This document shows, piece after piece, positions 2,784 through 26,383 of a DNA stretch of 64,000 nt. The translations under genes and the position numbers were made by a program. The notes beneath the pieces are model-generated. The model saw only the letters and a list, made by a program, of their open reading frames with translations. It searched no databases and was not told the DNA's origin. Each line of letters opens with the position of its first letter. The first letter of the stretch is position 1. Location: the IMG/VR virus record IMGVR_UViG_3300010885_025649, positions 148,498 through 212,497 of that record. One strand, given 5' to 3'.

Positions 2784-2849
2784 GAAACTTCGGGTCGGTA
2801 CTAATAAAAGGGTCGGTAGACCCTAGGGAAACTAGGATAATCTACCGAC
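2784..2849 (-). promoter_or_regulatory. junction J1: terminator hairpin (CCTAG-GGAAA-CTAGG family) plus motif, second variant motif
   Basis: GTCGGTAGA..TCTACCGAC immediately after RNAP stop. Confidence 0.7.
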
Positions 2850-2859
2850 GCGTTAAGTG

Positions 2860-5667
2860 TTAGTCAATGCCTAGGTCAACCACACGGTTATATTCTGCTA
2901 CAACTTGTTTCTCCACCCCAAGGGTCAGAGCCACAAAGTAGAAGAAGCCTAGGTGTTTGATGCTACCTTCTCCTTGTTTAACCTTATCTGCTGTAAGAGC
3001 AGTAAAGTACAGGAGTTGGTCCTCAGAGAAGCCAAGAGTGTAAGCTTGAAGCTTATGCTCAATAGCAACCATGAGCGCACCATAGTTAGCCCCTTGAGAC
3101 ACTTGATCAAGGAGGATACGGTAGTCCACCTCAATAGCCTTATAGGCAACCCGAACATCTTCATACTCATCAGTGGGCAGAGCTTGACCCATGATCTCCC
3201 AGCGAGAGAGGTTAGAGGTCAAGGTATCCACATCAAGTACAGGATGCTCAGTCAAGTTGGTGAGGGTTGACCACACGTAGTCTGCTACGTGACCATAGCC
3301 TAGAGAACGAATCTCCGCCAAGTGGGGAGACAATTTCTCATAGGTGGTAGCTTCTGCCACAGCCAAAGCCCGTGCTTTGGTAGCAGTAAAGCCTTGATCA
3401 CGCAGCTCATTAACCCGATCTACCAGCCCATGATCTTTCCACACTTCCTTAAGGTGGGAAATAGCACTAAGGATTGGGCTGATATCTTTGTAGGGCATTT
3501 CACCCACGCCACCCAAAGCTTTCCACAACTTAGTAGCTTCAAGACGAAAGGCATGTAAGCTCAAAGAGCTATCAACCGTCTTCTTCATGCTGTTGAGGAC
3601 CGCTTGGATGTAACGAGCGAACTTGAACCTGATAGATGGCACCGCGCCTTCAGCACCGCTATCATCACCTTTGGTAAAGGCGGCAATCAGACCTGCACTA
3701 TGGTACAGGAACATCAAGGCCTTACCGAGGTTAACAGCGACGCCCACTTTAGCATCCCCTTCTTTGACCACCATAGCCATGACGTTCTTCCACGTAGAGT
3801 CTCCACTATTGGAGTGCTCAGTCTTCGTGGTAAGCGAACCATGGTTGCTGATGCGGGTATCATTTAGGGTAAGGAACTCAGGTAAGATCCCCCCTTCACA
3901 ATCCCCGTCAAAGTCACCTTGAATTTGCCCTTGAGTATAGGGAGTCATCAAGAACGCTGTTTGCTCGCCATGATCAATGACCTTTAAGGCCACCCAGCTA
4001 AAGTCAAACAACGCGGGTGCGCGATGGAAGATCATCACAGAACCCAGGGGGTATTTCCCTTTCAGTTCTGCTGGAACAATTACTTCATCATCTTTAATCC
4101 CGGTGTGGGGTAGGATGGGAAGATTGTATCCAGGCAAGCGATGAGTCAACATACGCTTCTTGAAGGCGTTAGTGAACTCGCTTGTGACATCTTCAAGGAT
4201 GGACTTGGCCAGCGGAAGACCAGCAGCTTGCATACGTAAGGCTAAACCTTGCGTACCAAACTGAGAACCGGCCTCATGCTCTTTGGCCAACGTGAGGAAC
4301 TTGCCCTCATCCCAGAGCTTAGCCATCGCTTGCACCTCTGCAAGAGAGGATACATGGTAGGCAGCTTTTAACTCAGGGTGGGCAAGAGTATCCATGAAGC
4401 GCAGATCTACCCCAAAGTTCAGAAGAGTCTGACGGGGATTAATCCACACGTTCATGATCAACAGTTCCTCAGGTTTGAGGGTGAGCTGATCCCCGTGCTT
4501 GGGCAAAGCGGCACCTTTTGCGCATTGGGTGAAAGCCTCCACAATAAAGCACAAAGAAGCCTCAGGATTGATCTCACGCGCCGCTGCTACCAAGCGTTTC
4601 TGCTTGTGATCAGTAGGCTTATTGATCATACCTTTGGCATTCAACATGCCGTGGTTAAGGAGAGCCGTACCTTGAGCAGGCGTGCAGGTATGCCCCACAG
4701 CCTCAAAGATTTGCTCATCATCAACCACTAACGCAAAGGGGCCATCCATGCTGACCTTGTATTTAATGCCAAGCTCTTTCGCGCTGACAAATACAATGTT
4801 AGCCAGGGAATGAAACAGGGGCGCACCAGGACGAAGGAGCGTTCTAGCCAGTTTATTAGCTAGGGCTGCATCCTCAGTCTGCTGAGGTTTATCTGTCCAC
4901 ACATAGGTCCCAGATGCACCTTTAACCCCTAACAGGTATGGGTGATTAGGGAACGCTGCATGAGCATGCTCAGCAACAGGAGCCATGAAATGCTCTTTGC
5001 CTACATAGGCTTGAGTCAGTTCCGCGCTTTCGATCTGGTACGTTGAAATAGGCTTGTTGGCCCGCACCGCTTCTGCCTCAGCCTTCTTAACGGCCTCATG
5101 ATCTTTGAGGACACTAGCTTTATAATCAAACATGTCAGCGCCCGTAGGACGACCAACTTGTTGAGTAATCAAGCCATTCTCAAACACCATAGGTTTGTAC
5201 CATCCGGCCGCAAATGGGTCAGAGGTTTTAACCTTAGGCAACGGTTTCTGTGGCTGATTGAACGCACCCTTGGTAAAGCTGATGCTATCTTTCCGCGTTA
5301 CTTCAGAAGCATGTGCTTCTTTTTCACACGGGAATTTCACATCAGCATAAGCCCGAGGGAAGGGGCGCTCTTGCTGAGTCCATGCGCGCACTACGCCGTT
5401 GTGGAGCTTCTTAACGCTAACAATCTTATCCAGATTACCATCAGCTTCGATCTTATACAAGATCTTAGCGACAGAGCTGAATGCAGACTGCGGCATTTTG
5501 AAGCCGTCAATAAAGAGGATAGGGTTACCCCGATCATCCCGGACGATTTCCACAAGGTGCGACGAGATAGCCTTCTTGTAGAAGAAGTCAATCACGTAGC
5601 TGCGTACAATCTCATCGGTCTCGGAGACCAATTGAATGCGCGCTTTGACGTTCATGGTTTTAGCCAT
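2860..5667 (-). CDS. single-chain two-barrel RNA polymerase (YonO/cellular-RdRP-like)
   Basis: ILPHTGIKDDEVIVP...VMIFHRAPAL...QGDFDGD (DFDGD at 3901-3915); upstream SMDG...PAQG...NAKG fits the second barrel. Confidence 0.85.
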   Translation of the reverse strand: MAKTMNVKARIQLVSETDEIVRSYVIDFFYKKAISSHLVEIVRDDRGNPILFIDGFKMPQSAFSSVAKILYKIEADGNLDKIVSVKKLHNGVVRAWTQQERPFPRAYADVKFPCEKEAHASEVTRKDSISFTKGAFNQPQKPLPKVKTSDPFAAGWYKPMVFENGLITQQVGRPTGADMFDYKASVLKDHEAVKKAEAEAVRANKPISTYQIESAELTQAYVGKEHFMAPVAEHAHAAFPNHPYLLGVKGASGTYVWTDKPQQTEDAALANKLARTLLRPGAPLFHSLANIVFVSAKELGIKYKVSMDGPFALVVDDEQIFEAVGHTCTPAQGTALLNHGMLNAKGMINKPTDHKQKRLVAAAREINPEASLCFIVEAFTQCAKGAALPKHGDQLTLKPEELLIMNVWINPRQTLLNFGVDLRFMDTLAHPELKAAYHVSSLAEVQAMAKLWDEGKFLTLAKEHEAGSQFGTQGLALRMQAAGLPLAKSILEDVTSEFTNAFKKRMLTHRLPGYNLPILPHTGIKDDEVIVPAELKGKYPLGSVMIFHRAPALFDFSWVALKVIDHGEQTAFLMTPYTQGQIQGDFDGDCEGGILPEFLTLNDTRISNHGSLTTKTEHSNSGDSTWKNVMAMVVKEGDAKVGVAVNLGKALMFLYHSAGLIAAFTKGDDSGAEGAVPSIRFKFARYIQAVLNSMKKTVDSSLSLHAFRLEATKLWKALGGVGEMPYKDISPILSAISHLKEVWKDHGLVDRVNELRDQGFTATKARALAVAEATTYEKLSPHLAEIRSLGYGHVADYVWSTLTNLTEHPVLDVDTLTSNLSRWEIMGQALPTDEYEDVRVAYKAIEVDYRILLDQVSQGANYGALMVAIEHKLQAYTLGFSEDQLLYFTALTADKVKQGEGSIKHLGFFYFVALTLGVEKQVVAEYNRVVDLGID

Positions 5668-5705: not shown

Positions 5706-6281
5706 TTACGCAGCCAATTTGACTGCAAACGCAACAAGGCTAGCAAAGGTGTCTTTGGTGACAACCTTTTTAGCTGCAGGCTCCTTCACTTTAGTAGCAG
5801 AAGCTACCGCAGTAAAGAGTGGCACGGCCACCATTTTGATTTGGCGAGCCGCCCAAGCAGCCGCAGATGCAGCTACTTGTTTGCGTGCCACGCTGGCCGC
5901 TACTTGAGCGCGACGGACTTGCGCCCGCGCAGTCAATACCGCCTGAGCCTTGCGGCACAGTTTGGTGAGCTTATTAACCAACTTGGCTACGGTAGCACCC
6001 AGCAAGCGCTGTTGCGCCCACTGGTACATACCTTTAGTAGCCAGGGCTTTAAGCCCCTTGTTAGCCCGGGCCAACACGGCTTTCACCGCATTGGTTGGTA
6101 GGCTCGCCACGTTACCGTGGAAAGCCCCTTGTTCCGCAACTGCAAGGGCAGCACGAAAAGTAACCGATTTGGCCAGAGTGGCCTTAATGCTGGCCGCTTT
6201 AGCGACCTTTAAAGCCGTAGCTGCAGAGCAGCCACGGAAAGCCACCATATAGGCGGCTAAGTTGTTAACTGTGTTTGACAT
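5706..6281 (-). CDS. Ala/Lys-rich basic protein, possibly nucleic-acid binding
   Basis: 191 aa, very few acidic residues; AAGGAG RBS; directly upstream of RNAP gene. Confidence 0.65.
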   Translation of the reverse strand: MSNTVNNLAAYMVAFRGCSAATALKVAKAASIKATLAKSVTFRAALAVAEQGAFHGNVASLPTNAVKAVLARANKGLKALATKGMYQWAQQRLLGATVAKLVNKLTKLCRKAQAVLTARAQVRRAQVAASVARKQVAASAAAWAARQIKMVAVPLFTAVASATKVKEPAAKKVVTKDTFASLVAFAVKLAA

Positions 6282-6342: not shown

Positions 6343-6356
6343 CAAATAAAAAGTCG
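6343..6356 (-). promoter_or_regulatory. junction J2: motif without hairpin
   Basis: CGACTTTTTATTTG upstream of the basic protein/RNAP pair. Confidence 0.65.
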
Positions 6357-6388
6357 GTAACCAAAAGGAGCAACCACATACACAATAA

Positions 6389-6487
6389 CTATTGAAGCTT
6401 ATACTTGGGTCGTTCTAAGGGGCCGACCAAACCTCCACGGTCAACAGCAATCACCAAACCGAGCTCAACACTGCTAACAACAGTCAT
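6389..6487 (-). CDS. 32-aa small protein
   Basis: AAGGAGG then MTVVSSVELGLVIAVDRGGLVGPLERPKYKLQ*; translated by hand. Confidence 0.45.
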   Translation of the reverse strand: MTVVSSVELGLVIAVDRGGLVGPLERPKYKLQ

Positions 6488-6547
6488 GTCTAATCCTCCT
6501 TCAAGAATAGGCAGAGAGAAGGCTCCCTGCCTACAAGTTAAAGGAGT

Positions 6548-6844
6548 TTATTTGGCAACAAATTCCCTGCAACCTCTATCTACACTGTGCGGATTAACCG
6601 CACACGACAACGCGGAGCTAAAGCTGTAATACTTACAGCCATAACAAGGCCTTAAAGCCTTTACAATCTCCCAGTCTTCCTCCGAACAGTAGCCTGAGGC
6701 TAGAAAGAAACTAACCTCCTGCTCCGCATACTCAGCTTGACGCTCTTCCTCTTGAGCACAGAGAAGGGCAAGGGCATCAGCCATAATCTCCCCTTGAGAT
6801 TGATCTTTGATTCCCTGTGCTTCAGCGTGTGTGTAGTAACCCAT
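6548..6844 (-). CDS. protein with C-terminal CxxC..CAVNP..C domain (DUF6464-like)
   Basis: CYGCKYYSFSSALSCAVNPHSVDRGCREF. Confidence 0.65.
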   Translation of the reverse strand: MGYYTHAEAQGIKDQSQGEIMADALALLCAQEEERQAEYAEQEVSFFLASGYCSEEDWEIVKALRPCYGCKYYSFSSALSCAVNPHSVDRGCREFVAK

Positions 6845-6877
6845 GGTGCATCTCCATTACGCCACAAATCGAGGTGG

Positions 6878-6948
6878 CTAAATAAAGAGTCGGTATATAC
6901 AGAAAGAAAGTCGTTAACTCCTAGGGAAACTAGGATAAGTTAACGACT
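6878..6948 (-). promoter_or_regulatory. junction J3: hairpin plus tandem motifs
   Basis: AGTCGTTAACT-CCTAGGGAAACTAGG-ATA-AGTTAACGACT. Confidence 0.75.
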
Positions 6949-6955
6949 AGATTAA

Positions 6956-7261
6956 TTAAGCGGTGTAATAGTCAACTACAACCAAATTGCCTTTCAAGAA
7001 GGCAACAAGATCATAGTACTCGCCTTTATTAACATAAATCAAAACCTTCTTAGCCCCAAGAGCCAAGAAAGCTTGAAGCATTTCGCATGCGGTTGCATGT
7101 GAGAGGTTTTTGAACTTGGTGCGATTAGCACCAGTGTTGTAATCTTGCTTAGCCGCACGGAAGCGATTATGCTTGAGGACTAGCACTTGGCGATCCTCCA
7201 CCTCTGAAAACGAGATGCAAAAGGTCAACGCTGGGGTGATAACATTATGTTCTTGTAACAT
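6956..7261 (-). CDS. hypothetical protein
   Basis: ATG at 7261 after GGAGAG; the longer ORF-track start runs through the leader repeat. Confidence 0.65.
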   Translation of the reverse strand: MLQEHNVITPALTFCISFSEVEDRQVLVLKHNRFRAAKQDYNTGANRTKFKNLSHATACEMLQAFLALGAKKVLIYVNKGEYYDLVAFLKGNLVVVDYYTA

Positions 7262-7300
7262 GTGTCTCTCCAATAAGCCGCCTTTAAAAGAGGGCGAACT

Positions 7301-7329
7301 CAAATAAAGAGTCGGGGTTTCCCCCGACT
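7301..7329 (-). promoter_or_regulatory. junction J4: short hairpin plus motif
   Basis: CAAATAAAG-AGTCGGGG-TTTC-CCCCGACT. Confidence 0.75.
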
Positions 7330-7336
7330 TGTTTAT

Positions 7337-7504
7337 TTAGATCTTACCATTCTTAAGAATGGCCTCCTCCCATTCTTGCATAGCCATCCCGAAGACGATC
7401 TCCTGATCATCTTCAGGCGCAGCAGCGGCTGCTGCATATGCTTTGCACACTAGCATAAATAACAACCACTGCTGAGCAGTGGGAGTTACACAATAAACTC
7501 TCAT
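7337..7504 (-). CDS. 55-aa small protein
   Basis: GGAGAG then MRVYCVTPTAQQWLLFMLVCK...NGKI*; translated by hand. Confidence 0.6.
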   Translation of the reverse strand: MRVYCVTPTAQQWLLFMLVCKAYAAAAAAPEDDQEIVFGMAMQEWEEAILKNGKI

Positions 7505-7541
7505 GTTCTCTCCAATAAGCCACCTTTAAAAGAGGGTAGCT

Positions 7542-7555
7542 CAAATAAAGAGTCG
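7542..7555 (-). promoter_or_regulatory. junction J5: motif without hairpin
   Basis: CGACTCTTTATTTG. Confidence 0.65.
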
Positions 7556-7597
7556 CGTTATCACACACAATAATTATGGAACTCTATACTTGGGTCG

Positions 7598-7675
7598 TTA
7601 TAGGTAGGCAACAGCCACACCAACGCTAGCGTTAACCAAACTAAACATGTAACAACTAATCAAAAGCCTGCTCAT
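7598..7675 (-). CDS. 25-aa hydrophobic peptide
   Basis: GGAGG then MSRLLISCYMFSLVNASVGVAVAYL*. Confidence 0.4.
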   Translation of the reverse strand: MSRLLISCYMFSLVNASVGVAVAYL

Positions 7676-7728
7676 GATTAACCCTCCAAAGTAAGTGGGA
7701 GGAAGGCCCCCCACTTTAGACAGGTTAA

Positions 7729-7872
7729 TTATTTCTTAGCTGCGGCAGCTTCTTCATCACGCTCATCTTGAAGCCATTGCTCCCAGTAAGCATCCATCTG
7801 GAGCTTATGAATCCACAGATTCCAAGCCAGTGTGTGGTTCACCAACTTGACAATCATCTTCACTTTAGTCAT
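7729..7872 (-). CDS. 47-aa small protein
   Basis: GGAGAG then MTKVKMIVKLVNHTLAWNLW...AAAAKK*. Confidence 0.6.
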   Translation of the reverse strand: MTKVKMIVKLVNHTLAWNLWIHKLQMDAYWEQWLQDERDEEAAAAKK

Positions 7873-7910
7873 GGTACTCTCCAATGACTCACCTTTAAAA
7901 GAGGGCAAGT

Positions 7911-7940
7911 CAAAGAAAAGGTCGGGATTTCTCCCAACCT
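7911..7940 (-). promoter_or_regulatory. junction J6
   Basis: CAAAGAAA-AGGTCGGGA-TTTC-TCCCAACCT. Confidence 0.7.
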
Positions 7941-7949
7941 TTTAATCAA

Positions 7950-8372
7950 TTAAACAGTGTAATCACGGCACAAAGTGCCAAACCCTAGGGGGTTTACAGT
8001 ACACGGAAGCCGCCACTCCCCGGTGGCGTATTTACACGCCTCACAGGGATTAGGTTCCTGTTCCGCACACCAACGGTTGTAAGCTTCTACCGCATCTGGC
8101 TCAAGCTGTTCATCTTGAGCAAGGTGGTAGGCCTCCCGGCGCTCTTGCTCCGTCAGCTCCCGCGGGTCTAACCATGCGTCATAAGCGGGAGAGTTCTCCC
8201 AAAGACACATAGCGATTTCTTCCCGAATCGCCCGTTGGCGATCAGTGAGCAGACGAGTTGGAACTCCGACCCAAGGATCTTGCAGCACAGACTGCTTAGC
8301 AGCCCAGCGCTCAAAATCCCAGTGGTTTTGGTTGACCAAAACGATCTTGGTAGCCTGAGTAACTTTAAACAT
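7950..8372 (-). CDS. protein with C-terminal CxxC..CTVNP..C domain (DUF6464-like)
   Basis: CEACKYATGEWRLPCTVNPLGFGTLCRDYTV; start MFKVT after AAGGAG. Confidence 0.7.
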   Translation of the reverse strand: MFKVTQATKIVLVNQNHWDFERWAAKQSVLQDPWVGVPTRLLTDRQRAIREEIAMCLWENSPAYDAWLDPRELTEQERREAYHLAQDEQLEPDAVEAYNRWCAEQEPNPCEACKYATGEWRLPCTVNPLGFGTLCRDYTV

Positions 8373-8396
8373 TTGCGCTCCTTTAATAGTGGAGGA

Positions 8397-8472
8397 CAAA
8401 TAAAGAGTCGATAATACTTATCCTAGAAAAGAAGTCGGCAATCCCTAGAGAAACTAGGATAGATTGCCAACT
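8397..8472 (-). promoter_or_regulatory. junction J7: hairpin plus tandem motifs
   Basis: AGTCGGCAATC-CCTAGAGAAACTAGG-ATA-GATTGCCAACT. Confidence 0.75.
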
Positions 8473-8476
8473 CAAA

Positions 8477-8989
8477 TTACCACTTCATGGTAGCCTTAGA
8501 CCAGCCATCCGGAGCTGCATCTAATACTTCCATCAGATCTCCCGCCAGGTGGTAGCTAGCAGGAGAGGGCTTTCCAGAAGGCAAGGTCAGCTTCTGAGGC
8601 TCTTCAGCCTCGAAGTCAACCTGAAGAAATAAACGCACCATTGCATCTATTCCTATAGCTTTGGAAAGCCGAAAGGGAGGTAAGTTGCCCCGGTACGAAA
8701 CCGGCGATAGCGTCACGTCAACGCCAATCACACGATTCTCATACTGAAAGACCACATCAGCACCGTATACCCAATCCAGAATGGACCGGGCAGAACAGGT
8801 GTTGATAGGTCTCCCAATGATCCCCTCCAAGCTTTTCAGCTTACGAACACCTAAGAACCGCTGAGCGGTAGCTAGAAGTTCGACTTCGCTTGGACGAGGC
8901 CATGAGGCAAAGGTAGAGGGATGCAGCTCAATCAAACGAATGAACTGCAACTCAACTACCTTAGGATCGTAATACCCATCTTGGGACAT
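8477..8989 (-). CDS. hypothetical protein, possible PD-(D/E)XK nuclease fold
   Basis: LDWVYGADVVFQYENRVIGVDVT; start MSQDG after GAGG. Confidence 0.5.
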   Translation of the reverse strand: MSQDGYYDPKVVELQFIRLIELHPSTFASWPRPSEVELLATAQRFLGVRKLKSLEGIIGRPINTCSARSILDWVYGADVVFQYENRVIGVDVTLSPVSYRGNLPPFRLSKAIGIDAMVRLFLQVDFEAEEPQKLTLPSGKPSPASYHLAGDLMEVLDAAPDGWSKATMKW

Positions 8990-9067
8990 ACGAGTTCCTC
9001 TTGTATTGTGCCAACTCTTGGACGACCACACCAAGAGTAAGAACTACTGACACAGGATTGTAGGACT

Positions 9068-9116
9068 CAGAAAGAAAGTCGCTAACTTCTAGGGAAACTA
9101 GAATAGGTTAGCGACT
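9068..9116 (-). promoter_or_regulatory. junction J8
   Basis: AGTCGCTAAC-TTCTAGGGAAACTAGAA-TAG-GTTAGCGACT; compensatory change in the inner stem. Confidence 0.75.
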
Positions 9117-9122
9117 AATTAA

Positions 9123-9377
9123 TTACGCGTAGTAACGGCAGGAGCTGCCATTAGCACGGGCGGTACGGCCCGCACGATCAAACTTGACGCGGCTTTTGCC
9201 GTCACGGTTGTTTTTGCTACGGCTAAAGCAGGAACGGCAAGCGCTGGGATTACCCCAGAACCCGCCGTCAAACTTGGCATCGCCTGCCAAGAAGGTTCCG
9301 GAAGCAACGTAATAAAAGAAGGTGTTACCACCTTTCCCGTATACGTAGCTTTCCTCATCGTGAGTAACTTTAAACAT
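9123..9377 (-). CDS. 84-aa basic hypothetical protein
   Basis: start MFKVT after AAGGAG; leader nearly identical to that of 7950..8372. Confidence 0.65.
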   Translation of the reverse strand: MFKVTHDEESYVYGKGGNTFFYYVASGTFLAGDAKFDGGFWGNPSACRSCFSRSKNNRDGKSRVKFDRAGRTARANGSSCRYYA

Positions 9378-9455: not shown

Positions 9456-9461
9456 CATTAA

Positions 9462-19800: not shown

Positions 19801-22800
19801 TACCATAAGGAATAACAGTAGTATTTACCGCTTGTCCAGCGCTACGTAATCTATTAGTAGAATCTGTTACAGCTTGACTAATATCTGTAGTAGTAGGTGT
19901 TCTACCCAGGCGTCTACCAATAATAGCATCACGTTCAGCCATTGCTTGTGCGCTACTAGTAAGAGCTTGAATGGTAGCCATATCCCCGTCATAATCCCCT
20001 TGCTGGTAGCCCATAGCAAACTTAGACACGAATATACTATCAGAATTATTCGCGAATCCTAGCTGCACTCCGCGTCTTCCAGCAGCACGATTATTAAGAG
20101 TTCTCAGAGTAATAACCTTCAAAGCGGCGGGGGCAACACCCTGAGGTGCTCCTGCTCTTAGGAACATACTAAAGAATCTATCACTATATGCATCCACCTT
20201 AAGCATACTAAAAGTGTCATTAATAACACCTAATAGATTACGATCATAGCCTTGTTTAGTAGTAGGATCTAAGATACCATAAGATTCCGCATGATGACGA
20301 AGACTATAGCCATTAAGTTTAATATCATCTAATATAGAACTGCCAGCAGTAGAACCAACCAAAGTACTCTTTAGAGTAGTTTCATCTAAAGTAAAGGGAT
20401 TTGTAACAAAAAACTTAGGGTTAGTATAAGTATGAGCTTTAGTTAAAATATCAAACCCACTATCTAAGATTTCTTGATCTGCTCCCCCAGAGTAATAAGA
20501 TTTATTAGATTTAGCTTTAGTAACATAATCATTCACCACACGTAATGCAGGATTAAGTCCCAGAGCAATTTCTCCCAACTTAACCTGATTAGATTCCATA
20601 GTAACACCAGAACCCCCGGCCGCTCTATGAATAGTGGTAGATAAGTATTGTTGATAAGTATCAGAATCAAGTAGGTTAGAAAGCGCTGTAATATAATTCC
20701 TCTTAGCCTCATTAAGAGATTTCAGGTAAGAATACTCTTCAATAGATAACCCGTAGTTAATAAGCTTTTTACCATTAGCATTACTAACATTCTGACTCAT
20801 ATATTGAATCTTAGACATATTAGTATCAGGATCTATTTCCTTTAAGGAAGTCGGCATTTGGTTAAAGACTTTAGTAATCTCTTGTTGACTTAGAACAAGT
20901 CTATTAATATATTGATCTGCATTATCTCTATTAGGATTTACATTAATAGATAATTGTTTAAGTTGTTCTGCTCCCAGTACAGGAATAAGTTCAAAGTCTA
21001 AGATAGTAGATTCAATATTTCTATGTACTCTAACTGCATTAGGAATAGCGGCCCCTAATTCAAATGTAGGAATCAGGACAGTACCCTTCTGCCTTGCGGC
21101 AAGTACTTCCTGTCTATATTTATACATATCAGTTTCATTAATTCCACCTGCTGTTCTATCTGCCGCAGAGGTATTAACTAAGGTTTGTATTTTAGTATTT
21201 AAATCTATTTTATTAGTACTAGATAATACATAACCAACAGCAGATTCTTTAGCTGATCTATACATAGAATCATACAAACTATGAATAGCCATAGCTTGAT
21301 TTCTTGTCTCTTCATTTACGACCAAGTGAGTAAGATCTAATCCACCATGCCATTGAGTATCAAAGGCAGGAGCAAATTCAGTTAAGCCTTGACTAAAAGC
21401 GCCGACAAGGAACATTCTCCCAATAGCTTGTTGAGTTAATTGTCTTAAGAGACCTATCTGTGATTGTTCACCGACAAGATCAGCAAAGGGAGTATTAGCA
21501 GTAAAGCCAAGGTGATCTGAATCATTAGCATAGTGTTCATATAAAGAAGCGTACTGACTAAACATATTAGCAGAAGTCTTGCGGCCAAATCTGGTATCAT
21601 CTGCTCTAAAGGTATCTTGAGATAAAGTAATCAGATTAAAGTTAGGAATAATCTGTTGTAATCTTTGTAGAGCTGTATTATCTTTTGGTTTAGCCCCGAG
21701 CATTTGTCCTAATACAGAAGAGACTAAACCATCTAGTTCCTCATTAGCTGGGATTCTACTAGCTCTAACTTGTGTTTTAACCTGAGTATATAAAGAAACA
21801 GCTTCAATCAAGTAATAAGTAAAGTCTAATTTATGAGCTTGTGCTTGTTTTGCAGGAAGGATAAATCCAAACTTCTGACTTTGAGGACTCATTACTTCTG
21901 TATAAGCCTCTTTAAACAACTGATTAATATATTGTGCAGGATCAGCATGTTGTATAAACTGATATAATTCATTATAGAAACCATGAGGAGACCCCGCAGT
22001 ATAATAACTTTGCATAGCTGCCTTGACTTCAGGAGGTGTTTTATTATAGAAATCAATTTGCTCCTTAGACATTTTATTAACTAAACTTTCAGTAAGCTTT
22101 TTAACATCCTCAATAACTTCTTGAGTAAGTGTCTGCAAATGTTTAGTAGAACTATGTGTTTGAAGATTTCTTAATTCCATAATCTTCATGAAATCATCTT
22201 CATTAGTAGCCATTAACGCGCCATATCTAAGTTTAAGGGCACCAGACATTTTAGGTTGTGTCCCATACTTAAACTGTTTAGGAGATACAAGTCTATTAAT
22301 AAGAGGGCTAGCTGTTGCCAAAGATCCCTTAAGTTTTGTTCTAAAGTCAGCACCATCATTAACAAAGAGTTTATCTTCATCAAAGACATCATTATTCATC
22401 AAGACATCTTGAACAGCATTACTAAGTCTAAGGAATCTTCTAGCCCCAATACCTCCATAAATACCATCTAAGGCATTTGCTTGCGTTTCGGCATAAGTTC
22501 TATTCATACCTGCGGTAGGACCTTTAGTATCAAGCAATCTAGCAGTAGGATTAGTATAAAGTTTAGCTTTAAAAGTGACAGCAGTATTACCAGATTGTTC
22601 TGGATCCACATTAATCATAACAAACTGCATTTTAGCGCCGGTTCTATTTTCAGCTAAGTTAGGAACTTCAACAGTAAAACCTGCCCCCATACCAACAGAT
22701 TTCTGTAGATTAGTAACAGCAACTTTAAATTCATCTTCAGTATAAAAGTTACCCGCAGTAACTAAATCTCTTAGTTTAGTAACTAAGTTATTATGTGTGT

Positions 22801-25800
22801 TTTGATCTGCGGTTGTTTTATAGGGTTGGAATCTGATAGTAAGATCTACTAACCGCACTTGTGTAGTATCTAAAAGATCATAACCTATTTCAGGATTAAG
22901 TCCGGCCTCACCAGTCGTAAGTGCAACCACTTGCAGTGGTTCCCGAGGTCTTTCTATAGCAGCAAGCTGAGCTAATCTTAAAGCATCACTAGCTTCACCA
23001 TAACCCATATGATAAACGGGTTCAGGCAAACCTGTTTCTCTAAACTGATTAGTAGCAGGATTAAACTGCCCATATTGATAAGAGAATCTAGGCGAAGCCA
23101 AGTTCTTAGTTCTTTGTCCTAATTGCCCAATAGATTTATGTGCTGTAAGAACGGCAACCATAGGAATTCTAAAAGGAGTTCCCGCGGCAGTATTACCGGT
23201 AACATCATCAAGTTTGTCATAAGCCTGCATTCTAAAAGCAGCTTCCATAGTAAGAATAGAAGCAGCAGGATCTCCAATCTGAGTAATAGCTCCAAGCTTC
23301 TTAGCTTTATATCCTTTAGTTAATTGGCTTTGCATAGACAGAGAATACATAGTCTCTGAAGTACCATCAAGGTTATAAACAACTCCTTCAACTCCTGGAG
23401 AATCCGGACTAACTGGAGCCACTTTAATAACTTGTTCATTAGTAGTAAATAGATCATCATACATAAAAGGTTGATACTTATTACTATCCCCAAGTTGAGA
23501 ATACCCCATAGTTTTAGTAGGGATAGGAACAGAAGCTTTAGTAAGCATTTTAAAGATAATACGCATCTCTTCGGTATTAAATCTACTCAGATCTTCGTTA
23601 GTTCCGGTAGATTTAATAATTCTATATTTCATCAAGCGCATTTTATCAACAGTATCAGTAAGAGTAAGATCAGGATTATCCAATGCTCTATCATAAGCGC
23701 GTAATCTTTGTACCAATTGATATTCCGCGATCTGTCCTAAAGCAATAATAGCTTGAGCGGAATTAAGTTTAACAGTTTGATTAGCCCCAAAAGTTCTACC
23801 AGCAATAACACGTTCTTTATCTCCGGTATTAATAAGCATACTTGAGATTAAGGTGTCATATTTCTGCATATAGATATCACCTTTTTCAGTGAACCCAATA
23901 TCATAGTTAAATACATCTTCCCCTGCATATTTAAGTCTAATTCTAAGACCTGATTGCGGTATTCCTGGTAAATGTTCTTGCATAAAGAGTTTAGAATTTA
24001 ATCCACCCTTTTGATTAAATTCCATAGTTTGTCTAATAAGCTCACTAGCTTTATTCCAAGAAGCTTTAGTACCAAATGCTTGTCTAGCCGCATTATTAAA
24101 CTCCGCAGTACTACTATAAATAGGACTACGACCACTAAGGGTATCTTCTCTAAAGAGTCCAAGTTCTTGTAGTCCTGATTTAAGTTGCCCTAATAATTGT
24201 GGATCATGTGAGTCTTTATTACCAATAAACAAACCAGTCTCAGTATTACTGCGCAAAGCTCTAGCACTAATATTAGCCGAGGTCATCAATCCATATTGGG
24301 CATCACCATACTGATTAGTAACCAACATACTAGTTTGGTGTTGAAATCTTTGTGTAGACGAAAATCTAATCTTCCCGGCGGCAACAAGTCTATCAAATTC
24401 CCCGGGGTTAGTAGTATCAAAATATCGTCTAGCTTGTTCTAATCTAACATCCCCCCCAAGTTCTAATGGAGATCCCAGCATTAAAGTAAATCTATCTGTA
24501 TTTAAAGCCTTAAGTATCTTAGTACTTATACCCGAAATAGTATTAGAAGATAGATCTAACTGATTAGTTAGTAAGTATCCTCTAGAAGTGCCCTCATCTA
24601 AGACAGTTTGTAATAATTTATCCAGAGCAAGTTCATTAAGGTTACTACCCGTAGTACCAATAGGCCCTCTAGTATCTATAAGAGCAGTAGTTTGATATTT
24701 AGTAACTGCATCTATAGCATCAGTAACCAATAATTGTTGATACTGGGTACCAAGGCTAGCTCCAGTAAACACAGATTCCACCCCAGCGCTATATTGTCTA
24801 ATCTGTTTACCAACCAAAGTACTATCATTAAGCAGATTAGAGCCATGTAAACCAACAAACATTTGGTTAAACTGTGATGGATTAGTATAAGGTTCAGACA
24901 TTCTACCAGTAGCACTAGGAGTTAAGTTCTGTTTACCCAACCCAGCAAATGCTATAAGTTGCCCATCCCCATACACAGATATATTCTTTTGGTGTTCAAT
25001 TCCGCCACTAGAACCACTACTAAGATCTTCATGGAAAACCCCAGAGGCACGAATCATATCATCAATAGCATTTACATTTCCACTAGTAAACGCATCCAGA
25101 TAAGTTCTACCCCCAACAATAGATCTTAAAGCATCACTATTAAGAACAATAGAGCCACCCCTACCTTGTTGTAAGAATGCTAGATTAATATCTAGTTTAC
25201 CCCCATATTCAGCATCAGCCAATTGTAATAAGTTCTTAGCCATAGCAAAGACTTCCAAGTTACCTGAGGTAATACTACTAGAAGGTGCTTGCACAGTTAA
25301 GTTAATAGTTAATTTATTAAGGCTATTCTTAACAGTACTTCTAGGATTAAGTAGATAATCTGTAGCTGCGATCAGCATTTGATTAATCTGCCCTTCTTGT
25401 TGGAAGAAGGAGCTAAAGATAGTCGCTTCACTAAAAGCAACAGGACCAATACCCGCAGCAGCAAACACATTAGCAAAGCTAGCTAAAGTAGGAGCACTAA
25501 GAATACCAGTAGGAGTTTCAGTAACATTTAGTAGAGATCTAAACCCCAAAGGATCCTCATTAAACTTAATACCTTTACGAACACTAGCAATACCCACAGT
25601 ATCAAGCAAGAAGTGATTAGCCATAACAACCTGCATAGCACTAGAAGCAATGGCACTCATATTCAAATAGAAGTCATCATTAGCAAGCCTATCTGAGTCA
25701 AGAGTATTAATAGCAACTCCAGACTTAGTATAGAAATTTCTAAGTTCAGAGCTATAACTTTCTACAGGTTTAAAGAATGGTTGTAATGCACGTTTAAGTC

Positions 25801-26383
25801 TTCTATTAGGTTCTTGAGTAGGGTCAAAGTAATTAAATGCATTAGTGCCGGCCTCCATAAACAAGCTCAAACCTTCTCCTAAAGTTTGTCTATAAGATTG
25901 AACTTCAGCAGTTTCTTGGAATTGATAAGCATCCGCAGCTTCAATATTAGCTTCCAAATCTAAGAATGCCGTTTCAGAGGCGGAGCTACCAGCTCTATCA
26001 ACATGATATTGTCTAGCAGCTTGACTAATAGCAGTAGCTAAATCCTTATTACTACTCATTGCAGTAAGTCTGAACTTTCTAATAGTACTACCATCAGGAG
26101 CTAATTCGCTTTGCACAACTAAGCGATTATCTACAAAGTAATTATCTTGCCCAAATGGAGACGCACCTCTACGATAATAATAGGGGTTACTATCCCCGGA
26201 CATATCAGTACCAGGAGACTGGAACATCTTATCTCTAAAGACGCGTCTATTAGCATTTCTAGTATCATAGACCCCAGCAATACCTTTATCAATAAGCGCA
26301 GCAACATTATCATCAGAGGTAATGGCATAACCGCCCTGATAATACTGTCCTGTTATTTTATTCAAGAAACTATTATTGCGCAT
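16832..26383 (-). CDS. giant (~3,180 aa) protein with two-barrel RNAP active site; candidate virion RNA polymerase
   Basis: MFLRAGAP...IFVSKFAMGYQQGDYDGD (DYDGD at 19982-19996); TARLLDTKGP; PLD-like motifs; hydrophobic C-terminal helices; ATG at 26383 (track start 26398). Confidence 0.7.
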   Translation of the reverse strand: MRNNSFLNKITGQYYQGGYAITSDDNVAALIDKGIAGVYDTRNANRRVFRDKMFQSPGTDMSGDSNPYYYRRGASPFGQDNYFVDNRLVVQSELAPDGSTIRKFRLTAMSSNKDLATAISQAARQYHVDRAGSSASETAFLDLEANIEAADAYQFQETAEVQSYRQTLGEGLSLFMEAGTNAFNYFDPTQEPNRRLKRALQPFFKPVESYSSELRNFYTKSGVAINTLDSDRLANDDFYLNMSAIASSAMQVVMANHFLLDTVGIASVRKGIKFNEDPLGFRSLLNVTETPTGILSAPTLASFANVFAAAGIGPVAFSEATIFSSFFQQEGQINQMLIAATDYLLNPRSTVKNSLNKLTINLTVQAPSSSITSGNLEVFAMAKNLLQLADAEYGGKLDINLAFLQQGRGGSIVLNSDALRSIVGGRTYLDAFTSGNVNAIDDMIRASGVFHEDLSSGSSGGIEHQKNISVYGDGQLIAFAGLGKQNLTPSATGRMSEPYTNPSQFNQMFVGLHGSNLLNDSTLVGKQIRQYSAGVESVFTGASLGTQYQQLLVTDAIDAVTKYQTTALIDTRGPIGTTGSNLNELALDKLLQTVLDEGTSRGYLLTNQLDLSSNTISGISTKILKALNTDRFTLMLGSPLELGGDVRLEQARRYFDTTNPGEFDRLVAAGKIRFSSTQRFQHQTSMLVTNQYGDAQYGLMTSANISARALRSNTETGLFIGNKDSHDPQLLGQLKSGLQELGLFREDTLSGRSPIYSSTAEFNNAARQAFGTKASWNKASELIRQTMEFNQKGGLNSKLFMQEHLPGIPQSGLRIRLKYAGEDVFNYDIGFTEKGDIYMQKYDTLISSMLINTGDKERVIAGRTFGANQTVKLNSAQAIIALGQIAEYQLVQRLRAYDRALDNPDLTLTDTVDKMRLMKYRIIKSTGTNEDLSRFNTEEMRIIFKMLTKASVPIPTKTMGYSQLGDSNKYQPFMYDDLFTTNEQVIKVAPVSPDSPGVEGVVYNLDGTSETMYSLSMQSQLTKGYKAKKLGAITQIGDPAASILTMEAAFRMQAYDKLDDVTGNTAAGTPFRIPMVAVLTAHKSIGQLGQRTKNLASPRFSYQYGQFNPATNQFRETGLPEPVYHMGYGEASDALRLAQLAAIERPREPLQVVALTTGEAGLNPEIGYDLLDTTQVRLVDLTIRFQPYKTTADQNTHNNLVTKLRDLVTAGNFYTEDEFKVAVTNLQKSVGMGAGFTVEVPNLAENRTGAKMQFVMINVDPEQSGNTAVTFKAKLYTNPTARLLDTKGPTAGMNRTYAETQANALDGIYGGIGARRFLRLSNAVQDVLMNNDVFDEDKLFVNDGADFRTKLKGSLATASPLINRLVSPKQFKYGTQPKMSGALKLRYGALMATNEDDFMKIMELRNLQTHSSTKHLQTLTQEVIEDVKKLTESLVNKMSKEQIDFYNKTPPEVKAAMQSYYTAGSPHGFYNELYQFIQHADPAQYINQLFKEAYTEVMSPQSQKFGFILPAKQAQAHKLDFTYYLIEAVSLYTQVKTQVRASRIPANEELDGLVSSVLGQMLGAKPKDNTALQRLQQIIPNFNLITLSQDTFRADDTRFGRKTSANMFSQYASLYEHYANDSDHLGFTANTPFADLVGEQSQIGLLRQLTQQAIGRMFLVGAFSQGLTEFAPAFDTQWHGGLDLTHLVVNEETRNQAMAIHSLYDSMYRSAKESAVGYVLSSTNKIDLNTKIQTLVNTSAADRTAGGINETDMYKYRQEVLAARQKGTVLIPTFELGAAIPNAVRVHRNIESTILDFELIPVLGAEQLKQLSINVNPNRDNADQYINRLVLSQQEITKVFNQMPTSLKEIDPDTNMSKIQYMSQNVSNANGKKLINYGLSIEEYSYLKSLNEAKRNYITALSNLLDSDTYQQYLSTTIHRAAGGSGVTMESNQVKLGEIALGLNPALRVVNDYVTKAKSNKSYYSGGADQEILDSGFDILTKAHTYTNPKFFVTNPFTLDETTLKSTLVGSTAGSSILDDIKLNGYSLRHHAESYGILDPTTKQGYDRNLLGVINDTFSMLKVDAYSDRFFSMFLRAGAPQGVAPAALKVITLRTLNNRAAGRRGVQLGFANNSDSIFVSKFAMGYQQGDYDGDMATIQALTSSAQAMAERDAIIGRRLGRTPTTTDISQAVTDSTNRLRSAGQAVNTTVIPYGTSGVDAVHSTYDALYGVLGPTSAEETAERIMEDKRIVSLHEQVTANVTSDTNILATFKRQSRVLSGLNAQTIEDSILLNKFGRAQYESTTKIIDHFHSAEFETVVSTELGAAGAAAFKSASVEDKLNTIQGNPTLSQHLAAYSANEGTVNSYLKLMFPVIMPQNIAAAATQQTAQVATKYMGMLYDTTSHIFSHEFLQADSMGKAKARTIESVSRIAYQMQMLGREGIKPNAATGVSPSEMYTALNQLYENAYEDKPTKTKLQPAALDQAVQATGLLNPVADYISAVQGNAGTPLTESISNKILTNLSYGALAAHVGSLSSDEIAHDFAKEVPHTKLQTIRRIAANLFQTLDEELVTGGSSEKITRLVTLAEDSLGRSAMNNSDIAALRAFATDTTGTVTYTKDLQDTMNRVLQAHQYHDLFKFVTSTLNERELMASRINTSNTIAPFGEAGLGSIDFDPLSVPDARNKVNELMHKGLLNIQKMYGVQKALTTESKADIGDLALAAAHIGQALITESVNFASREGAGTTITDILGRGKLHNVNIKEIMSGFRASIDETMKTKTFSDAVDKILEYSSHGPRAFPGEIYVNGSGKIVNGVSYIRATGMIGTDPSTASYTHEYSTSAGPQSKVIDYETAKRIVGRKLIIDRAISDASRLGISGQTAKETMMFIAQAAYESTSAPDSNEHNQNLVDLSNALHNNIKQMNPYEANEMVTRLAQSNELRAHINPPSGLIRNFKNAMSNNTPMGFLGYGMLAVTTIGASIVGGALGRESNTDPAELGRSVGHGLMSSNTFAPMRSAFMMASDITSAVKSMRDMSDSDTRHEILGGYALGLAGNIVGSTILSDVITTPIAKFIGKEGTNVGELASRGLANMGSGLITAAFGALAAGLSAAMAVRTATREESPVTSLTAQAIENEYEQAQAERYRLELINSAGESDVLNIAEVSITDSIDEYDDSELNQTSYLSSINNQEYEYHFQDVAGNDMSVMTT

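What the first reader, a model, noticed from the sequence alone, without database searches (positions are those of the whole stretch)
2784..26383. Candidate new system: two phage two-barrel RNA polymerases plus a dedicated promoter/terminator cassette array
Seen: two separate genes carry the DxDGD Mg-binding motif preceded by an R..P strand (935 aa, DFDGD; ~3,180 aa, DYDGD). A non-sigma70 motif precedes nearly every gene from 2.8 to 15.9 kb, including the operon for the smaller RNAP, and I saw no copy in the structural region. Established: N4 and phiKZ use a virion RNAP followed by a non-virion RNAP; crAss-like phages pack a single-chain two-barrel RNAP; SPbeta YonO transcribes late genes. Inference: the giant enzyme is injected and reads CGAC-Y-rich-G promoters, producing the YonO-like enzyme for later genes. 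I do not know of this pairing of two single-chain two-barrel RNAPs in a cyanobacterial myovirus.
Basis: partly seen in the sequence, partly recalled or inferred. Interest (0 to 1): 0.92.

Follow-up and report, generated by a model that had tools for sequence, protein, structure and literature searches.

The report
Phage RNA polymerase with private signals
An uncultured freshwater giant phage related to Microcystis cyanophages encodes its own single-chain RNA polymerase at the end of a 10-kb row of small genes that each carry the same private start and stop signals, while the idea that a second, 3,183-residue neighbouring protein is an injected polymerase remains unproven.

Summary
The 935-aa ORF (2860-5667, minus) carries HRAP...GDFDGD, and its model matches all solved single-chain two-barrel RNA polymerases: phi14:2 gp66, QDE-1, P23-45-type gp64 and RDR2 (Foldseek E 2e-6 to 2e-5). 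I take it to be a new, nearly orphan member of that clade.

The CGAC + pyrimidine-rich + G box occurs 27 times against 0.3 expected. All copies lie on the gene strand between 6343 and 15877, and a looser scan adds a copy at 2815. They form two classes. One is a promoter-like 14-mer, CGACTCTTTATTTG, followed by a 5'UTR. The other is a covarying, very stable hairpin ending in CGACTTCTTTTCTG, which looks like a terminator. Of 22 genes in the row, 20 are preceded by a box.

The giant protein is not verified as a polymerase. It has a single DYDGD with an RAGAP strand upstream. It shows no significant sequence or profile similarity to any polymerase, and its structure prediction failed. Indirect support is that syntenic giant proteins of Ma-LMM01-type cyanophages, 40 of 40, keep GDxDGD.

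The claimed novelty of the pairing is weakened, because Thermus phage P23-45 already has exactly this scheme. My verdict is a new variant of a known kind. It is interesting mainly because it predicts phage polymerases in cultured Ma-LMM01, which is currently thought to rely on the host enzyme.

The parts
2860..5667 (-). 935-aa single-chain two-barrel RNA polymerase gene (candidate non-virion polymerase). The catalytic GDFDGD is encoded at nt 3901-3915.
   Evidence: Translation. The weak PDB sequence hits all fall in register on the NADFDGD barrel of largest subunits. AlphaFold core aa 283-613 has block-mean pLDDT 51-92. Foldseek against PDB: 6vr4 gp66 2.4e-6, QDE-1 3e-6, gp64/gp62 7.5e-6 to 4.2e-5, RDR2 1.7e-5. 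Foldseek against BFVD: P23-45 gp64 2.3e-6, crAss-like pieces.
5706..6281 (-). 191-aa Ala/Lys/Val-rich basic protein, 38 nt upstream of the polymerase gene and evidently co-transcribed with it. It may be a partner or a nucleic-acid-binding factor.
   Evidence: No Pfam hit. The last promoter-like box (6343-6356) precedes this gene.
6343..15877 (-). Array of about 22 short genes with 13 promoter-like boxes (CGACTCTTTATTTG; high coordinates 15877, 15585, 15355, 12498, 11868, 11109, 10559, 9415, 8410, 7555, 7314, 6892, 6356) and 16 hairpin + CGACTTCTTTTCTG elements (15606, 15376, 14890, 14631, 14237, 13780, 13309, 12679, 12525, 11136, 10111, 9436, 9081, 8437, 7924, 6913).
   Evidence: 27 matches against 0.3 expected, and none on the plus strand.
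2801..2849 (-). Terminal copy of the conserved hairpin (GTCGGTAGA..TATCCTAGTTTCCCTAGG..TCTACCGAC + CCTTTTATTAG), immediately after the polymerase gene. It marks the end of the box-bearing region.
   Evidence: -21.2 kcal/mol, z -5.9. Downstream intergenic regions lack the box.
16832..26383 (-). Giant 3,183-aa protein (ORF open from TTG at 26398). The single GDYDGD is at nt 19982-19996, an HKD-like stretch at about aa 674-758, and hydrophobic segments at aa 2945-2963 and 3074-3095. It is a candidate virion-delivered polymerase, unverified.
   Evidence: Negative results. It is syntenic with Ma-LMM01 gp080.
15938..16807 (+). 289-aa LOV-type PAS protein with a C-terminal hydrophobic helix, between the giant gene and the array and divergent from the array. 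It is a neighbour, and I have not shown it to be part of the system.
   Evidence: PAS_9 E 5.6e-22. GKNCRFLQG motif.

Best explanation
This is the early-transcription module of an uncultured jumbo myovirus of at least 212 kb, organised like the two-polymerase scheme of Thermus phage P23-45.

A GC-rich block (44-50% G+C in a 33-38% genome) begins at 15.9 kb with a row of about 22 short genes on the minus strand. Most of these genes are their own transcription unit. Each unit has a 14-nt box, CGACTCTTTATTTG, lying 25-60 nt before the start codon and followed by a small 5'UTR hairpin and a ribosome-binding site; I read this as the promoter. Each also has a stable, covarying hairpin whose 3' arm ends in the same CGAC and runs into TTCTTTTCTG; I read this as the terminator. 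The last unit encodes a basic 191-aa protein and a 935-aa single-chain two-barrel RNA polymerase. One more hairpin closes the region.

Because the boxes precede the polymerase gene itself and stop right after it, the enzyme that reads them should exist before the 935-aa enzyme is made. The most likely candidate is a polymerase brought in with the DNA. The 3,183-aa GDYDGD protein encoded next to the portal gene fits that role. The 935-aa enzyme would then transcribe later genes from other, still unidentified signals.

Shown: the fold class of the 935-aa protein; the existence, strand bias, placement and covariation of the boxes and hairpins; and the restriction of the composite hairpin-plus-box cassette to this array in the 212-kb contig.

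Inferred: which box is promoter and which is terminator; that host polymerase does not read them; that the giant protein is a polymerase and is injected; and the temporal order.
For: The 935-aa protein as a polymerase:
- In-register catalytic-barrel hits.
- Foldseek top hits are exactly the solved single-chain two-barrel enzymes, over 488-630 aligned columns. BFVD agrees.
- D585, D587, G588, D589 and P551 are invariant in its 7-member family.

The boxes:
- 27 against 0.3 expected, and 29 to 0 strand bias.
- 20 of 22 genes are preceded by a box.
- The hairpin family is 99.3% paired, with 6 pairs showing compensatory changes, while GTCG/CGAC and the inner TATCCTAGTTTCCCTAGG stay invariant.
- Hairpin stability is -18 to -30 kcal/mol, z -5.6 to -7.8.
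- There is no excess of sigma-70-like sites.
- The composite cassette is found in IMG/VR only in this phage's contigs, 7 per genome, all inside the array.

Precedent:
- In P23-45, gp96 reads 14 conserved promoters in a 9-kb pre-early region that contains the gp64 polymerase gene, and 7 terminators share a 26-nt motif (PMC10770324).

The giant protein:
- Its only DxDxD is GDYDGD, preceded by RAGAP..ALKVI. This resembles the 935-aa barrel (targeted BLASTP E 9e-4).
- The gene sits beside and divergent from the portal gene, like Ma-LMM01 gp080, whose 40-member family keeps RSPPPG...GD[FWL]DGD without exception.
- There are five weak collinear profile matches to that family.
Against: - No polymerase fold or second barrel could be shown for the giant protein. 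The AlphaFold model had pLDDT 35.8.
- The giant protein has no significant similarity to the 935-aa family, the gp080 family, or any PDB, Pfam or PHROG entry.
- The gp080-family profile itself hits only HKD/PLD nucleases in the PDB, not polymerases.
- The targeted BLASTP compared hand-picked pieces.
- Seven genes in the array are preceded only by the hairpin class. Either read-through is needed or that class also initiates, so the promoter and terminator assignment is not settled.
- The two box classes are so alike that one factor may read both.
- The published Ma-LMM01 transcriptome was interpreted as fully dependent on host sigma-70 (PMC5780444).
- There are no transcript data for this phage.
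Confidence: 0.45

Rival explanations
1. A T7-like order of events. Host RNA polymerase transcribes the array from one or a few ordinary promoters near 15.9 kb. The hairpin + U-rich elements are ordinary intrinsic terminators or attenuators, or RNA-stabilising or processing sites. The CGACTCTTTATTTG box is an RNA-level element such as a leader or translation signal. The 935-aa polymerase then takes over for later genes. The giant protein is a non-polymerase ejection or internal virion protein whose DYDGD is fortuitous or belongs to another metal site.
For: - The hairpins have textbook intrinsic-terminator geometry.
- In one UTR family the box pairs with the Shine-Dalgarno region in the predicted fold (fifth sequence).
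- TATTAT or TATATAC lies just upstream of 8 of the 13 boxes.
- There is no polymerase evidence for the giant protein beyond a short motif.
- The giant protein has an HKD-like stretch.
- Ma-LMM01 is reported to use host sigma-70 promoters.
Against: - There is no excess of sigma-70-type sites.
- The -10-like hexamer is missing from 5 of the 13 boxes.
- The invariance of GTCG/CGAC at the stem base, while the neighbouring pairs covary, points to sequence-specific recognition rather than mere stem formation.
- The box is confined to one strand and to one region that ends exactly at the polymerase gene. That is the pattern of dedicated phage promoters.
Confidence: 0.25
2. The 935-aa polymerase itself reads the CGAC boxes as a self-amplifying early system. 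A first round would come from host polymerase read-through or from packaged copies of the 935-aa enzyme. The giant protein plays no part in transcription.
For: - The only verified phage polymerase in the window is the 935-aa enzyme.
- Its operon carries the box.
- A distant relative's contig (L007) also shows small genes separated by repeated hairpin + TCTTTTTTG elements next to the polymerase gene.
Against: - In known systems such as T7 and P23-45, the polymerase gene is read by a different enzyme from the one it encodes (T7 from my own knowledge).
- The boxes end right after the polymerase gene instead of extending into downstream genes, as would be expected for its own regulon.
Confidence: 0.2
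3. The repeated hairpin and box units are selfish miniature repeats, REP- or MITE-like, that have spread through intergenic spacers of a horizontally acquired GC-rich island. They have no role in transcription.
For: - There are extended near-identical copies of 60-90 nt (families D1-D5).
- The island's composition differs from the rest of the genome.
Against: - Orientation is strictly single (29 to 0).
- Placement relative to start codons is fixed.
- There are compensatory changes in the stems.
- There are no copies elsewhere in the 212-kb genome.
Confidence: 0.05

Closest known systems
Thermus phage P23-45 two-polymerase system (gp96 tape-measure-fused virion RNAP + gp64 non-virion RNAP; PMC10770324)
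   Same: - It has a giant virion protein carrying DFDGD plus a smaller single-chain two-barrel polymerase.
- The smaller polymerase gene lies inside a roughly 9-kb block of short genes.
- Those genes carry a strongly conserved promoter motif (14 sites) and a conserved terminator motif (7 sites).
- The 935-aa model matches gp64/gp62 structures (E 7.5e-6 to 4.2e-5; BFVD gp64 2.3e-6 over 447 columns).
   Different: - The host phage here is a contractile-tailed jumbo phage related to cyanophages, not a siphovirus of Thermus.
- The giant gene lies next to the portal gene, and I have not shown it to be the tape measure.
- The polymerase nature of the giant protein is unverified.
- There is no sequence similarity to gp96 or gp64.
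- Here the promoter-like and terminator-like boxes share one core, CGAC + T-rich.
crAss-like phage phi14:2 gp66 virion RNA polymerase (PDB 6VR4)
   Same: - It is the best structural match of the 935-aa model (E 2.4e-6).
- It is a giant virion-packed two-barrel enzyme of the kind proposed for the 3,183-aa protein.
   Different: - For gp66, early transcripts showed no common upstream motif, and middle and late genes use host polymerase (bioRxiv 10.1101/2020.03.07.982082).
- Here a sharp motif exists and a second phage polymerase is present.
- The 935-aa protein is less than half the size of gp66.
SPbeta YonO
   Same: - It is a single-chain two-barrel polymerase of similar size (839 aa).
- There is an in-register match of RSPHLF...DNDGD with the SHP...DxDGD barrel of the 935-aa family.
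   Different: - The similarity is confined to one barrel, E 0.035 for a single comparison.
- tblastn of the 935-aa protein against 50,697 phage records finds nothing.
- I would not call it a member of the YonO family in the narrow sense.
Ma-LMM01-type cyanophage proteins gp080 (3,562 aa) and gp064 (1,673 aa)
   Same: - These are the nearest cultured relatives by capsid and portal.
- gp080 is syntenic with the window's giant gene and has RSPPPG...GDFDGD. gp064 has QRTP...GDADGDQCGGI and lies directly upstream of the published early genes gp054-063.
- So a pair of one giant and one smaller DxDGD protein recurs there.
   Different: - There is no significant sequence or profile similarity between the window proteins and gp080 or gp064.
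- Neither Ma-LMM01 protein is described as a polymerase in the paper I read.
- I saw no CGAC-type cassette in the Ma-LMM01 early region.
Phage N4 virion RNA polymerase with hairpin promoters
   Same: It is a giant (about 3,500 aa) ejected polymerase that reads a few early promoters containing hairpins (from my own knowledge; PMC13434306 was listed but not read).
   Different: - The N4 enzyme is T7-like, not two-barrel.
- The T7-type motifs I searched for are not convincingly present in the giant protein, and no PHROG hit was found.

Membership tests
Single-chain two-barrel RNA polymerases (QDE-1 / gp66 / gp64 / YonO clade): the 935-aa protein | Catalytic double-psi barrel with the DxDxD metal-binding loop preceded by an R/H-x-P strand | tested here: met
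   HRAP...GDFDGD. All 8 PDB profile hits fall on this barrel of largest subunits. D585, D587, G588, D589 and P551 are invariant in the family alignment.
Single-chain two-barrel RNA polymerases: the 935-aa protein | Overall fold matching solved members, with the second barrel and connecting elements in one chain | tested here: met
   The top 7 Foldseek hits against the PDB are gp66, QDE-1, gp64/gp62 and RDR2, all with probability 1.00 and 488-630 aligned columns. BFVD agrees. Caveat: the whole-model pLDDT is 49, only aa 283-613 is confident, TM-scores are low, and I did not map the basic residues of the second barrel.
Single-chain two-barrel RNA polymerases: the 935-aa protein | Bridge helix and trigger loop after the catalytic barrel | tested here: inconclusive
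   The C-terminal half (aa 614-935) is predicted helical, but block-mean pLDDT stays at or below 52.
Single-chain two-barrel RNA polymerases: the giant 3,183-aa protein | DxDxD loop with an upstream R-x-P strand | tested here: met
   A single GDYDGD at aa 2135, with RAGAP 53 aa upstream. The GDxDGD profile score is reached by about 3 of 500 shuffles.
Single-chain two-barrel RNA polymerases: the giant 3,183-aa protein | Double-psi barrel fold around the motif, plus a second barrel | tested here: inconclusive
   Single-sequence AlphaFold of aa 1450-2640 gave mean pLDDT 35.8 and pTM 0.25.
Single-chain two-barrel RNA polymerases: the giant 3,183-aa protein | Detectable sequence or profile similarity to any known polymerase family | tested here: not met
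   Pfam, PHROGs and PDB sequences give nothing. hhalign against the 935-aa family is not significant. tblastn against phages finds nothing. Such families are known to share little beyond the motif, so this is weak negative evidence.
YonO family in the narrow sense | Significant full-length similarity to YonO | tested here: not met
   hhalign gives E 0.035 and probability 1.5% over 97 columns of one barrel only. There is no tblastn hit in the phage records, which include SPbeta.
P23-45-type two-polymerase early transcription | The non-virion polymerase gene lies inside a block of short genes that carry one conserved promoter motif | tested here: met
   Compare. That the box is a promoter is an inference.
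P23-45-type two-polymerase early transcription | A conserved, sequence-specific terminator element in the same block | tested here: met
   Nine hairpins share an invariant core and covarying stems, and there are 17 hairpin + CGAC-T-rich elements in all.
P23-45-type two-polymerase early transcription | A virion-carried polymerase that transcribes that block | not testable with these tools
   This needs virion proteomics and rifampicin or ChIP experiments. The phage is known only from metagenomes.
Intrinsic (hairpin + U-tract) terminators | A stable G+C-containing stem-loop directly followed by a U-rich run on the transcribed strand | tested here: met
   47 terminator-like sites against 16.1 expected, mostly on the minus strand. 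Stability is -18 to -30 kcal/mol. The tails read UUCUUUUCU.
N4-type (T7-like) virion RNA polymerase | T7-family motifs (T/DxxGR, motif B Rx3Kx6-7YG, motif C), or a PHROG or Pfam hit | tested here: not met
   There is no Rx3K..YG match, and only scattered short K..YG and T/DxxGR matches. There is no PHROG or Pfam hit. The motif patterns were recalled from memory.

The most novel reading that the evidence does not exclude
Freshwater Ma-LMM01-type cyanophages and this jumbo relative all carry a previously unrecognised pair of two-barrel RNA polymerases. One is a giant, virion-delivered enzyme of more than 3,000 aa (the gp080 family, at least 40 members, with an invariant GDxDGD). The other is a smaller non-virion enzyme (gp064, or the 935-aa protein here). 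Early infection would then be independent of host polymerase, contrary to the current reading of the Ma-LMM01 transcriptome. In this phage one recognition core, CGAC + T-rich, would serve both initiation and termination by the injected enzyme.
Probability: 0.3. Interest if true: 0.8.

Novelty: new variant of a known kind. Interest (0 to 1): 0.62.

Why it matters
If the reading is right, the P23-45 strategy is not a curiosity of Thermus siphoviruses. In that strategy an injected giant two-barrel polymerase turns on a second, soluble one through private promoters and terminators. The same strategy would recur in large contractile-tailed phages related to bloom-controlling Microcystis cyanophages.

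The finding offers four concrete things:
- A compact 14-nt promoter candidate and a defined terminator hairpin for a new, nearly orphan polymerase family, which could be useful as orthogonal transcription parts.
- A testable prediction in a cultured system, namely that Ma-LMM01 gp080 and gp064 are polymerases.
- A large uncharacterised family of giant phage proteins with an invariant GDxDGD.
- A possible explanation for why Ma-LMM01 infection leaves host transcription untouched.

If the giant protein turns out not to be a polymerase, what remains is still a new two-barrel polymerase with an unusually clean regulatory array.

Tried and rejected
- Word-index homologue searches for both proteins returned only the proteins themselves.
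- An IMG/VR scan with the giant protein found only this phage's own contigs. The family alignment A1 was too divergent for a locus scan.
- The 935-aa protein and giant-gene DNA against 50,697 phage records gave no match.
- Rfam gave nothing above noise in 1-17 kb.
- The 14-mer alone in IMG/VR gave only scattered single chance hits elsewhere.
- Comparisons of the giant protein with the Ma-LMM01 gp080 family were all non-significant: BLASTP, a 1,294-position HMM, phmmer and BLASTP against 40 members, and hhalign. Only the GDxDGD box and weak collinear windows stood out.
- The gp080-family profile against PDB sequences gave no polymerase, only HKD/PLD nucleases and coiled coils.
- Ma-LMM01 gp064 against the 935-aa family and against the PDB gave nothing significant.
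- No RLxK..RP-type motif, like that conserved in the 935-aa family, was found in the giant protein.
- I looked for a second conserved motif that could serve the 935-aa enzyme. There is no clear repeat in the 10 kb downstream of its gene. TATA[GC]TAT occurs in 4 structural-module spacers but is not enriched overall, 22 against 21.6.
- An N4-like or T7-like identity of the giant protein was rejected for lack of motifs.
- A chimeric assembly as the cause of the GC jump was rejected, because the junction is present in independent contigs of 212 kb and 155 kb.
- I did not run Foldseek on the giant model, because a model with pLDDT 35.8 gives meaningless matches.


Full report
**What the window is.** The window comes from an uncultured phage seen in several freshwater metagenome assemblies. 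These are JGI contigs of 212,497, 155,514 and 48,591 bp plus a Logan contig. From 26.5 kb onward it encodes a contractile-tail virion module: portal, major head protein, sheath and baseplate wedge. The nearest cultured relatives by head protein and portal are the Microcystis myoviruses of the Ma-LMM01 group and Microcoleus phage My-WqHQDG, at only 26-28% identity. G+C is 0.46-0.50 from 1 to 16 kb and 0.30-0.41 afterwards. The GC-rich block runs for about 21 kb, past the window start. The junction is present in independent contigs, so it is not an assembly chimera.

- The 935-aa ORF (2860-5667, minus) reads ...VMIFHRAPALFDFSWVALKVIDHGEQTAFLMTPYTQGQIQGDFDGDCEGG....
- The giant ORF (16832-26398, minus; 3,183 aa from the ATG at 26383) has one DxDxD, GDYDGD at aa 2135, preceded by ...MFLRAGAPQGVAPAALKVITL....
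- CGACTYYTTWTYTG with at most one mismatch occurs 27 times against 0.30 expected. Every copy is on the minus strand between 6343 and 15877.
- A looser definition gives 29 minus-strand and 0 plus-strand hits in 71 kb, including one at 2815 just behind the 935-aa gene.
- Reading the spacers on the gene strand, 20 of 22 genes have a box upstream.

**Anatomy of the cassette.** There are two classes.
- Thirteen copies are the near-invariant 14-mer CGACT(C/T)TTTATTTG. It lies 25-60 nt before the start codon and is followed at once by a small hairpin and a Shine-Dalgarno sequence.
- Seventeen copies are a hairpin whose 3' arm ends in CGAC and runs into TTCTTTTCTG, or close variants of that.
- Where both occur (7 composite cassettes), the hairpin class always comes first, 7 or 13 nt before the 14-mer.
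- Nine hairpins form one family, with GTCG and CGAC invariant at the base and an invariant inner TAT-CCTAG-TTTCC-CTAGG. The five outer-stem pairs between them covary. Overall 99.3% of cells are paired, 6 pairs have changes on both sides, and 0 of 500 shuffles reach the covariation score.
- The hairpins are very stable, at -18 to -30 kcal/mol with z from -5.6 to -7.8.
- Terminator-like sites are three-fold enriched, while sigma-70-like sites are not.
- The composite cassette is found in IMG/VR only in this phage's contigs, seven times per genome, all within the array.
- The sequence-specific stem base, strict orientation and confinement to one block argue for dedicated signals read by a specific protein. 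They argue against generic terminators or selfish repeats.

**The 935-aa protein is a two-barrel RNA polymerase.**
- It has no Pfam or PHROG hit.
- Only seven distant relatives turned up in an exhaustive search of 1.84 billion representatives.
- Its family keeps D585, D587, G588, D589 and P551 invariant.
- Single-sequence and profile searches of PDB sequences return only the NADFDGD barrel of largest subunits, in register, with E from 0.04 to 2.
- An AlphaFold model from the 7-sequence alignment is poor overall (pLDDT 49) but confident in the core, aa 283-613.
- Foldseek puts exactly the solved single-chain two-barrel enzymes on top: phi14:2 gp66 (2.4e-6), QDE-1 (3.0e-6), P23-45-type gp64/gp62 (7.5e-6 to 4.2e-5) and RDR2 (1.7e-5). 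Multisubunit largest subunits and P23-45 gp96 follow.
- BFVD gives uncharacterised viral proteins (1e-10), P23-45 gp64 (2.3e-6 over 447 columns) and crAss-like polymerase fragments.
- Against YonO there is only an in-register one-barrel match, E 0.035. 'YonO-like' is therefore right at clade level only.

**The giant protein is unresolved.**
- Nothing significant appears in Pfam, PHROGs, PDB sequences or phage records.
- It has no close relatives.
- The single-sequence AlphaFold model of aa 1450-2640 was unusable, with pLDDT 35.8.
- A hand-picked comparison of about 100-aa pieces around the two motifs gives E 9e-4, matching R-A-x-P..ALKVI..QGD[FY]DGD. This is suggestive, but the pieces were selected.

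The best indirect evidence for a polymerase reading is comparative.
- Ma-LMM01 has a 3,562-aa gene, gp080, in the same place: next to the portal gene and divergent from it.
- gp080 carries ...IQRSPPPGN...LLNPISFITSNLGDFDGDTF....
- All 40 relatives retrieved (2,186-5,384 aa) keep D[FWL]DGD at about 50-78% of their length.
- The most divergent members read RRGGAPAG, close to the window's RAGAPQG.

The link between the window's giant protein and that family is nevertheless not significant by BLASTP, phmmer, HMM or hhalign. Only the GDxDGD box stands out, with about 3 of 500 shuffles scoring as well, together with five weak collinear window-profile matches. One of these is an HKD-like stretch that Pfam also hints at. 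The gp080 family itself does not hit polymerases in PDB sequences. I put the chance that the giant protein is a polymerase at roughly 45%.

**Mechanism.** The closest worked example is Thermus phage P23-45. Its tape-measure-fused virion polymerase gp96 transcribes a 9-kb pre-early block from 14 conserved promoters. That block contains the gene for the second single-chain polymerase, gp64, and seven terminators share a 26-nt motif (PMC10770324). The present array has the same logic: a block of short units with one promoter-like box and one terminator element, ending with the polymerase operon, after which the boxes stop. A box in front of the polymerase operon implies a reader that exists before that polymerase does. 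Seven genes have only the hairpin class upstream. Either termination is partial or that class also supports initiation. The shared CGAC + T-rich core leaves open that one recognition module serves both functions.

New here:
- The 935-aa enzyme belongs to a nearly orphan family.
- The signal array is exceptionally clean.
- The setting is a jumbo myovirus related to cyanophages.
- Ma-LMM01 itself encodes two DxDGD proteins. One is gp080. The other is gp064 (1,673 aa...GIQRTPMG...NEGDADGDQCGGI...), which lies directly upstream of the early genes gp054-063.

The published transcriptome study concluded that all Ma-LMM01 classes depend on host sigma-70 and found no phage-specific motifs (PMC5780444). 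Testing gp080 and gp064 is therefore the practical way to settle this.

**Limits.**
- There are no expression data.
- The promoter and terminator roles are assigned from position and structure only.
- The second barrel of the 935-aa enzyme is inferred from alignment length, not mapped residue by residue.
- Only 71 kb of the genome, which is at least 212 kb, was inspected for further polymerase genes.

Noticed in passing
window 15938-16807 (+): A phage-encoded LOV-type photosensor candidate. It has PAS_9 at E 5.6e-22 with the canonical flavin-cysteine motif GKNCRFLQG, then a coiled-coil-like stretch and a C-terminal hydrophobic helix. It sits between the giant gene and the early array, divergent from the array.
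   Followed up: partly
window 1-16000 and L001 1-21000: A block of about 21 kb with 44-50% G+C in a genome of 33-38% G+C. It coincides with the early region, including the polymerase gene. I have no explanation for it.
   Followed up: partly
window 45083-46309 (+): A 408-aa transposase (PHROG 506, E 9.5e-108) lies inside the tail gene module, between a 290-aa ORF and the 1,176-aa ORF.
   Followed up: no
window 5706-6281 (-): A 191-aa, extremely Ala/Lys/Val-rich basic protein is co-transcribed with the polymerase (38-nt gap). It has no Pfam hit and could be a polymerase partner or a DNA/RNA-binding protein.
   Followed up: partly
L133 9812-14833 (-) and L131 12701-23389 (-) (Microcystis phage Ma-LMM01, NC_008562.1: gp064 43811-48832, gp080 57700-68388): The cultured cyanophage Ma-LMM01 encodes two DxDGD proteins. 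gp080 (3,562 aa) has RSPPPG...GDFDGD and is syntenic with the window's giant gene. gp064 (1,673 aa) has QRTP...GDADGDQCGGI and lies just upstream of the published early genes. Neither is described as a polymerase in PMC5780444.
   Followed up: partly
proteins P0010-P0049 (alignment A3 for 14 of them): A family of at least 40 giant phage proteins (2,186-5,384 aa) has an invariant D[FWL]DGD. The 14 aligned members also carry two HKD-type motifs near the N-terminus (NHPK..SD..IGT.N; H566/K568/N607). The only PDB hits are vaccinia nicking-joining enzyme and PLD4.
   Followed up: partly
L001 20300-21840 (about 4.6-6.2 kb beyond the window start): A 1.5-kb non-coding, AT-richer stretch with several 2-3-copy direct repeats lies at the far edge of the GC-rich block. 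It could be an origin or a terminus region.
   Followed up: no
window 26404, 32699, 35846, 46384 (+): TATA[GC]TAT occurs in four spacers of the structural module, upstream of a 139-aa ORF, a 429-aa ORF, a 133-aa ORF and the 1,176-aa ORF. It is not enriched window-wide (22 against 21.6), but it is a possible late-promoter lead.
   Followed up: partly
window 11060-11109 (-) and the similar leaders at 7314, 7555, 7924 and 11868: In this leader family the CUCUUUA of the 14-mer is predicted to pair with the UGGAGAG ribosome-binding region (-20 kcal/mol, z -4.2). Read-through transcripts might therefore be translationally masked, while box-initiated ones are not. Other leader families do not show this.
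   Followed up: no
L007 1-7832 (contig of distant relative P0003): The contig of a 26%-identical relative of the 935-aa polymerase also has small same-strand genes separated by repeated hairpin + TCTTTTTTG or TTCTTTTTCTG elements.
   Followed up: partly
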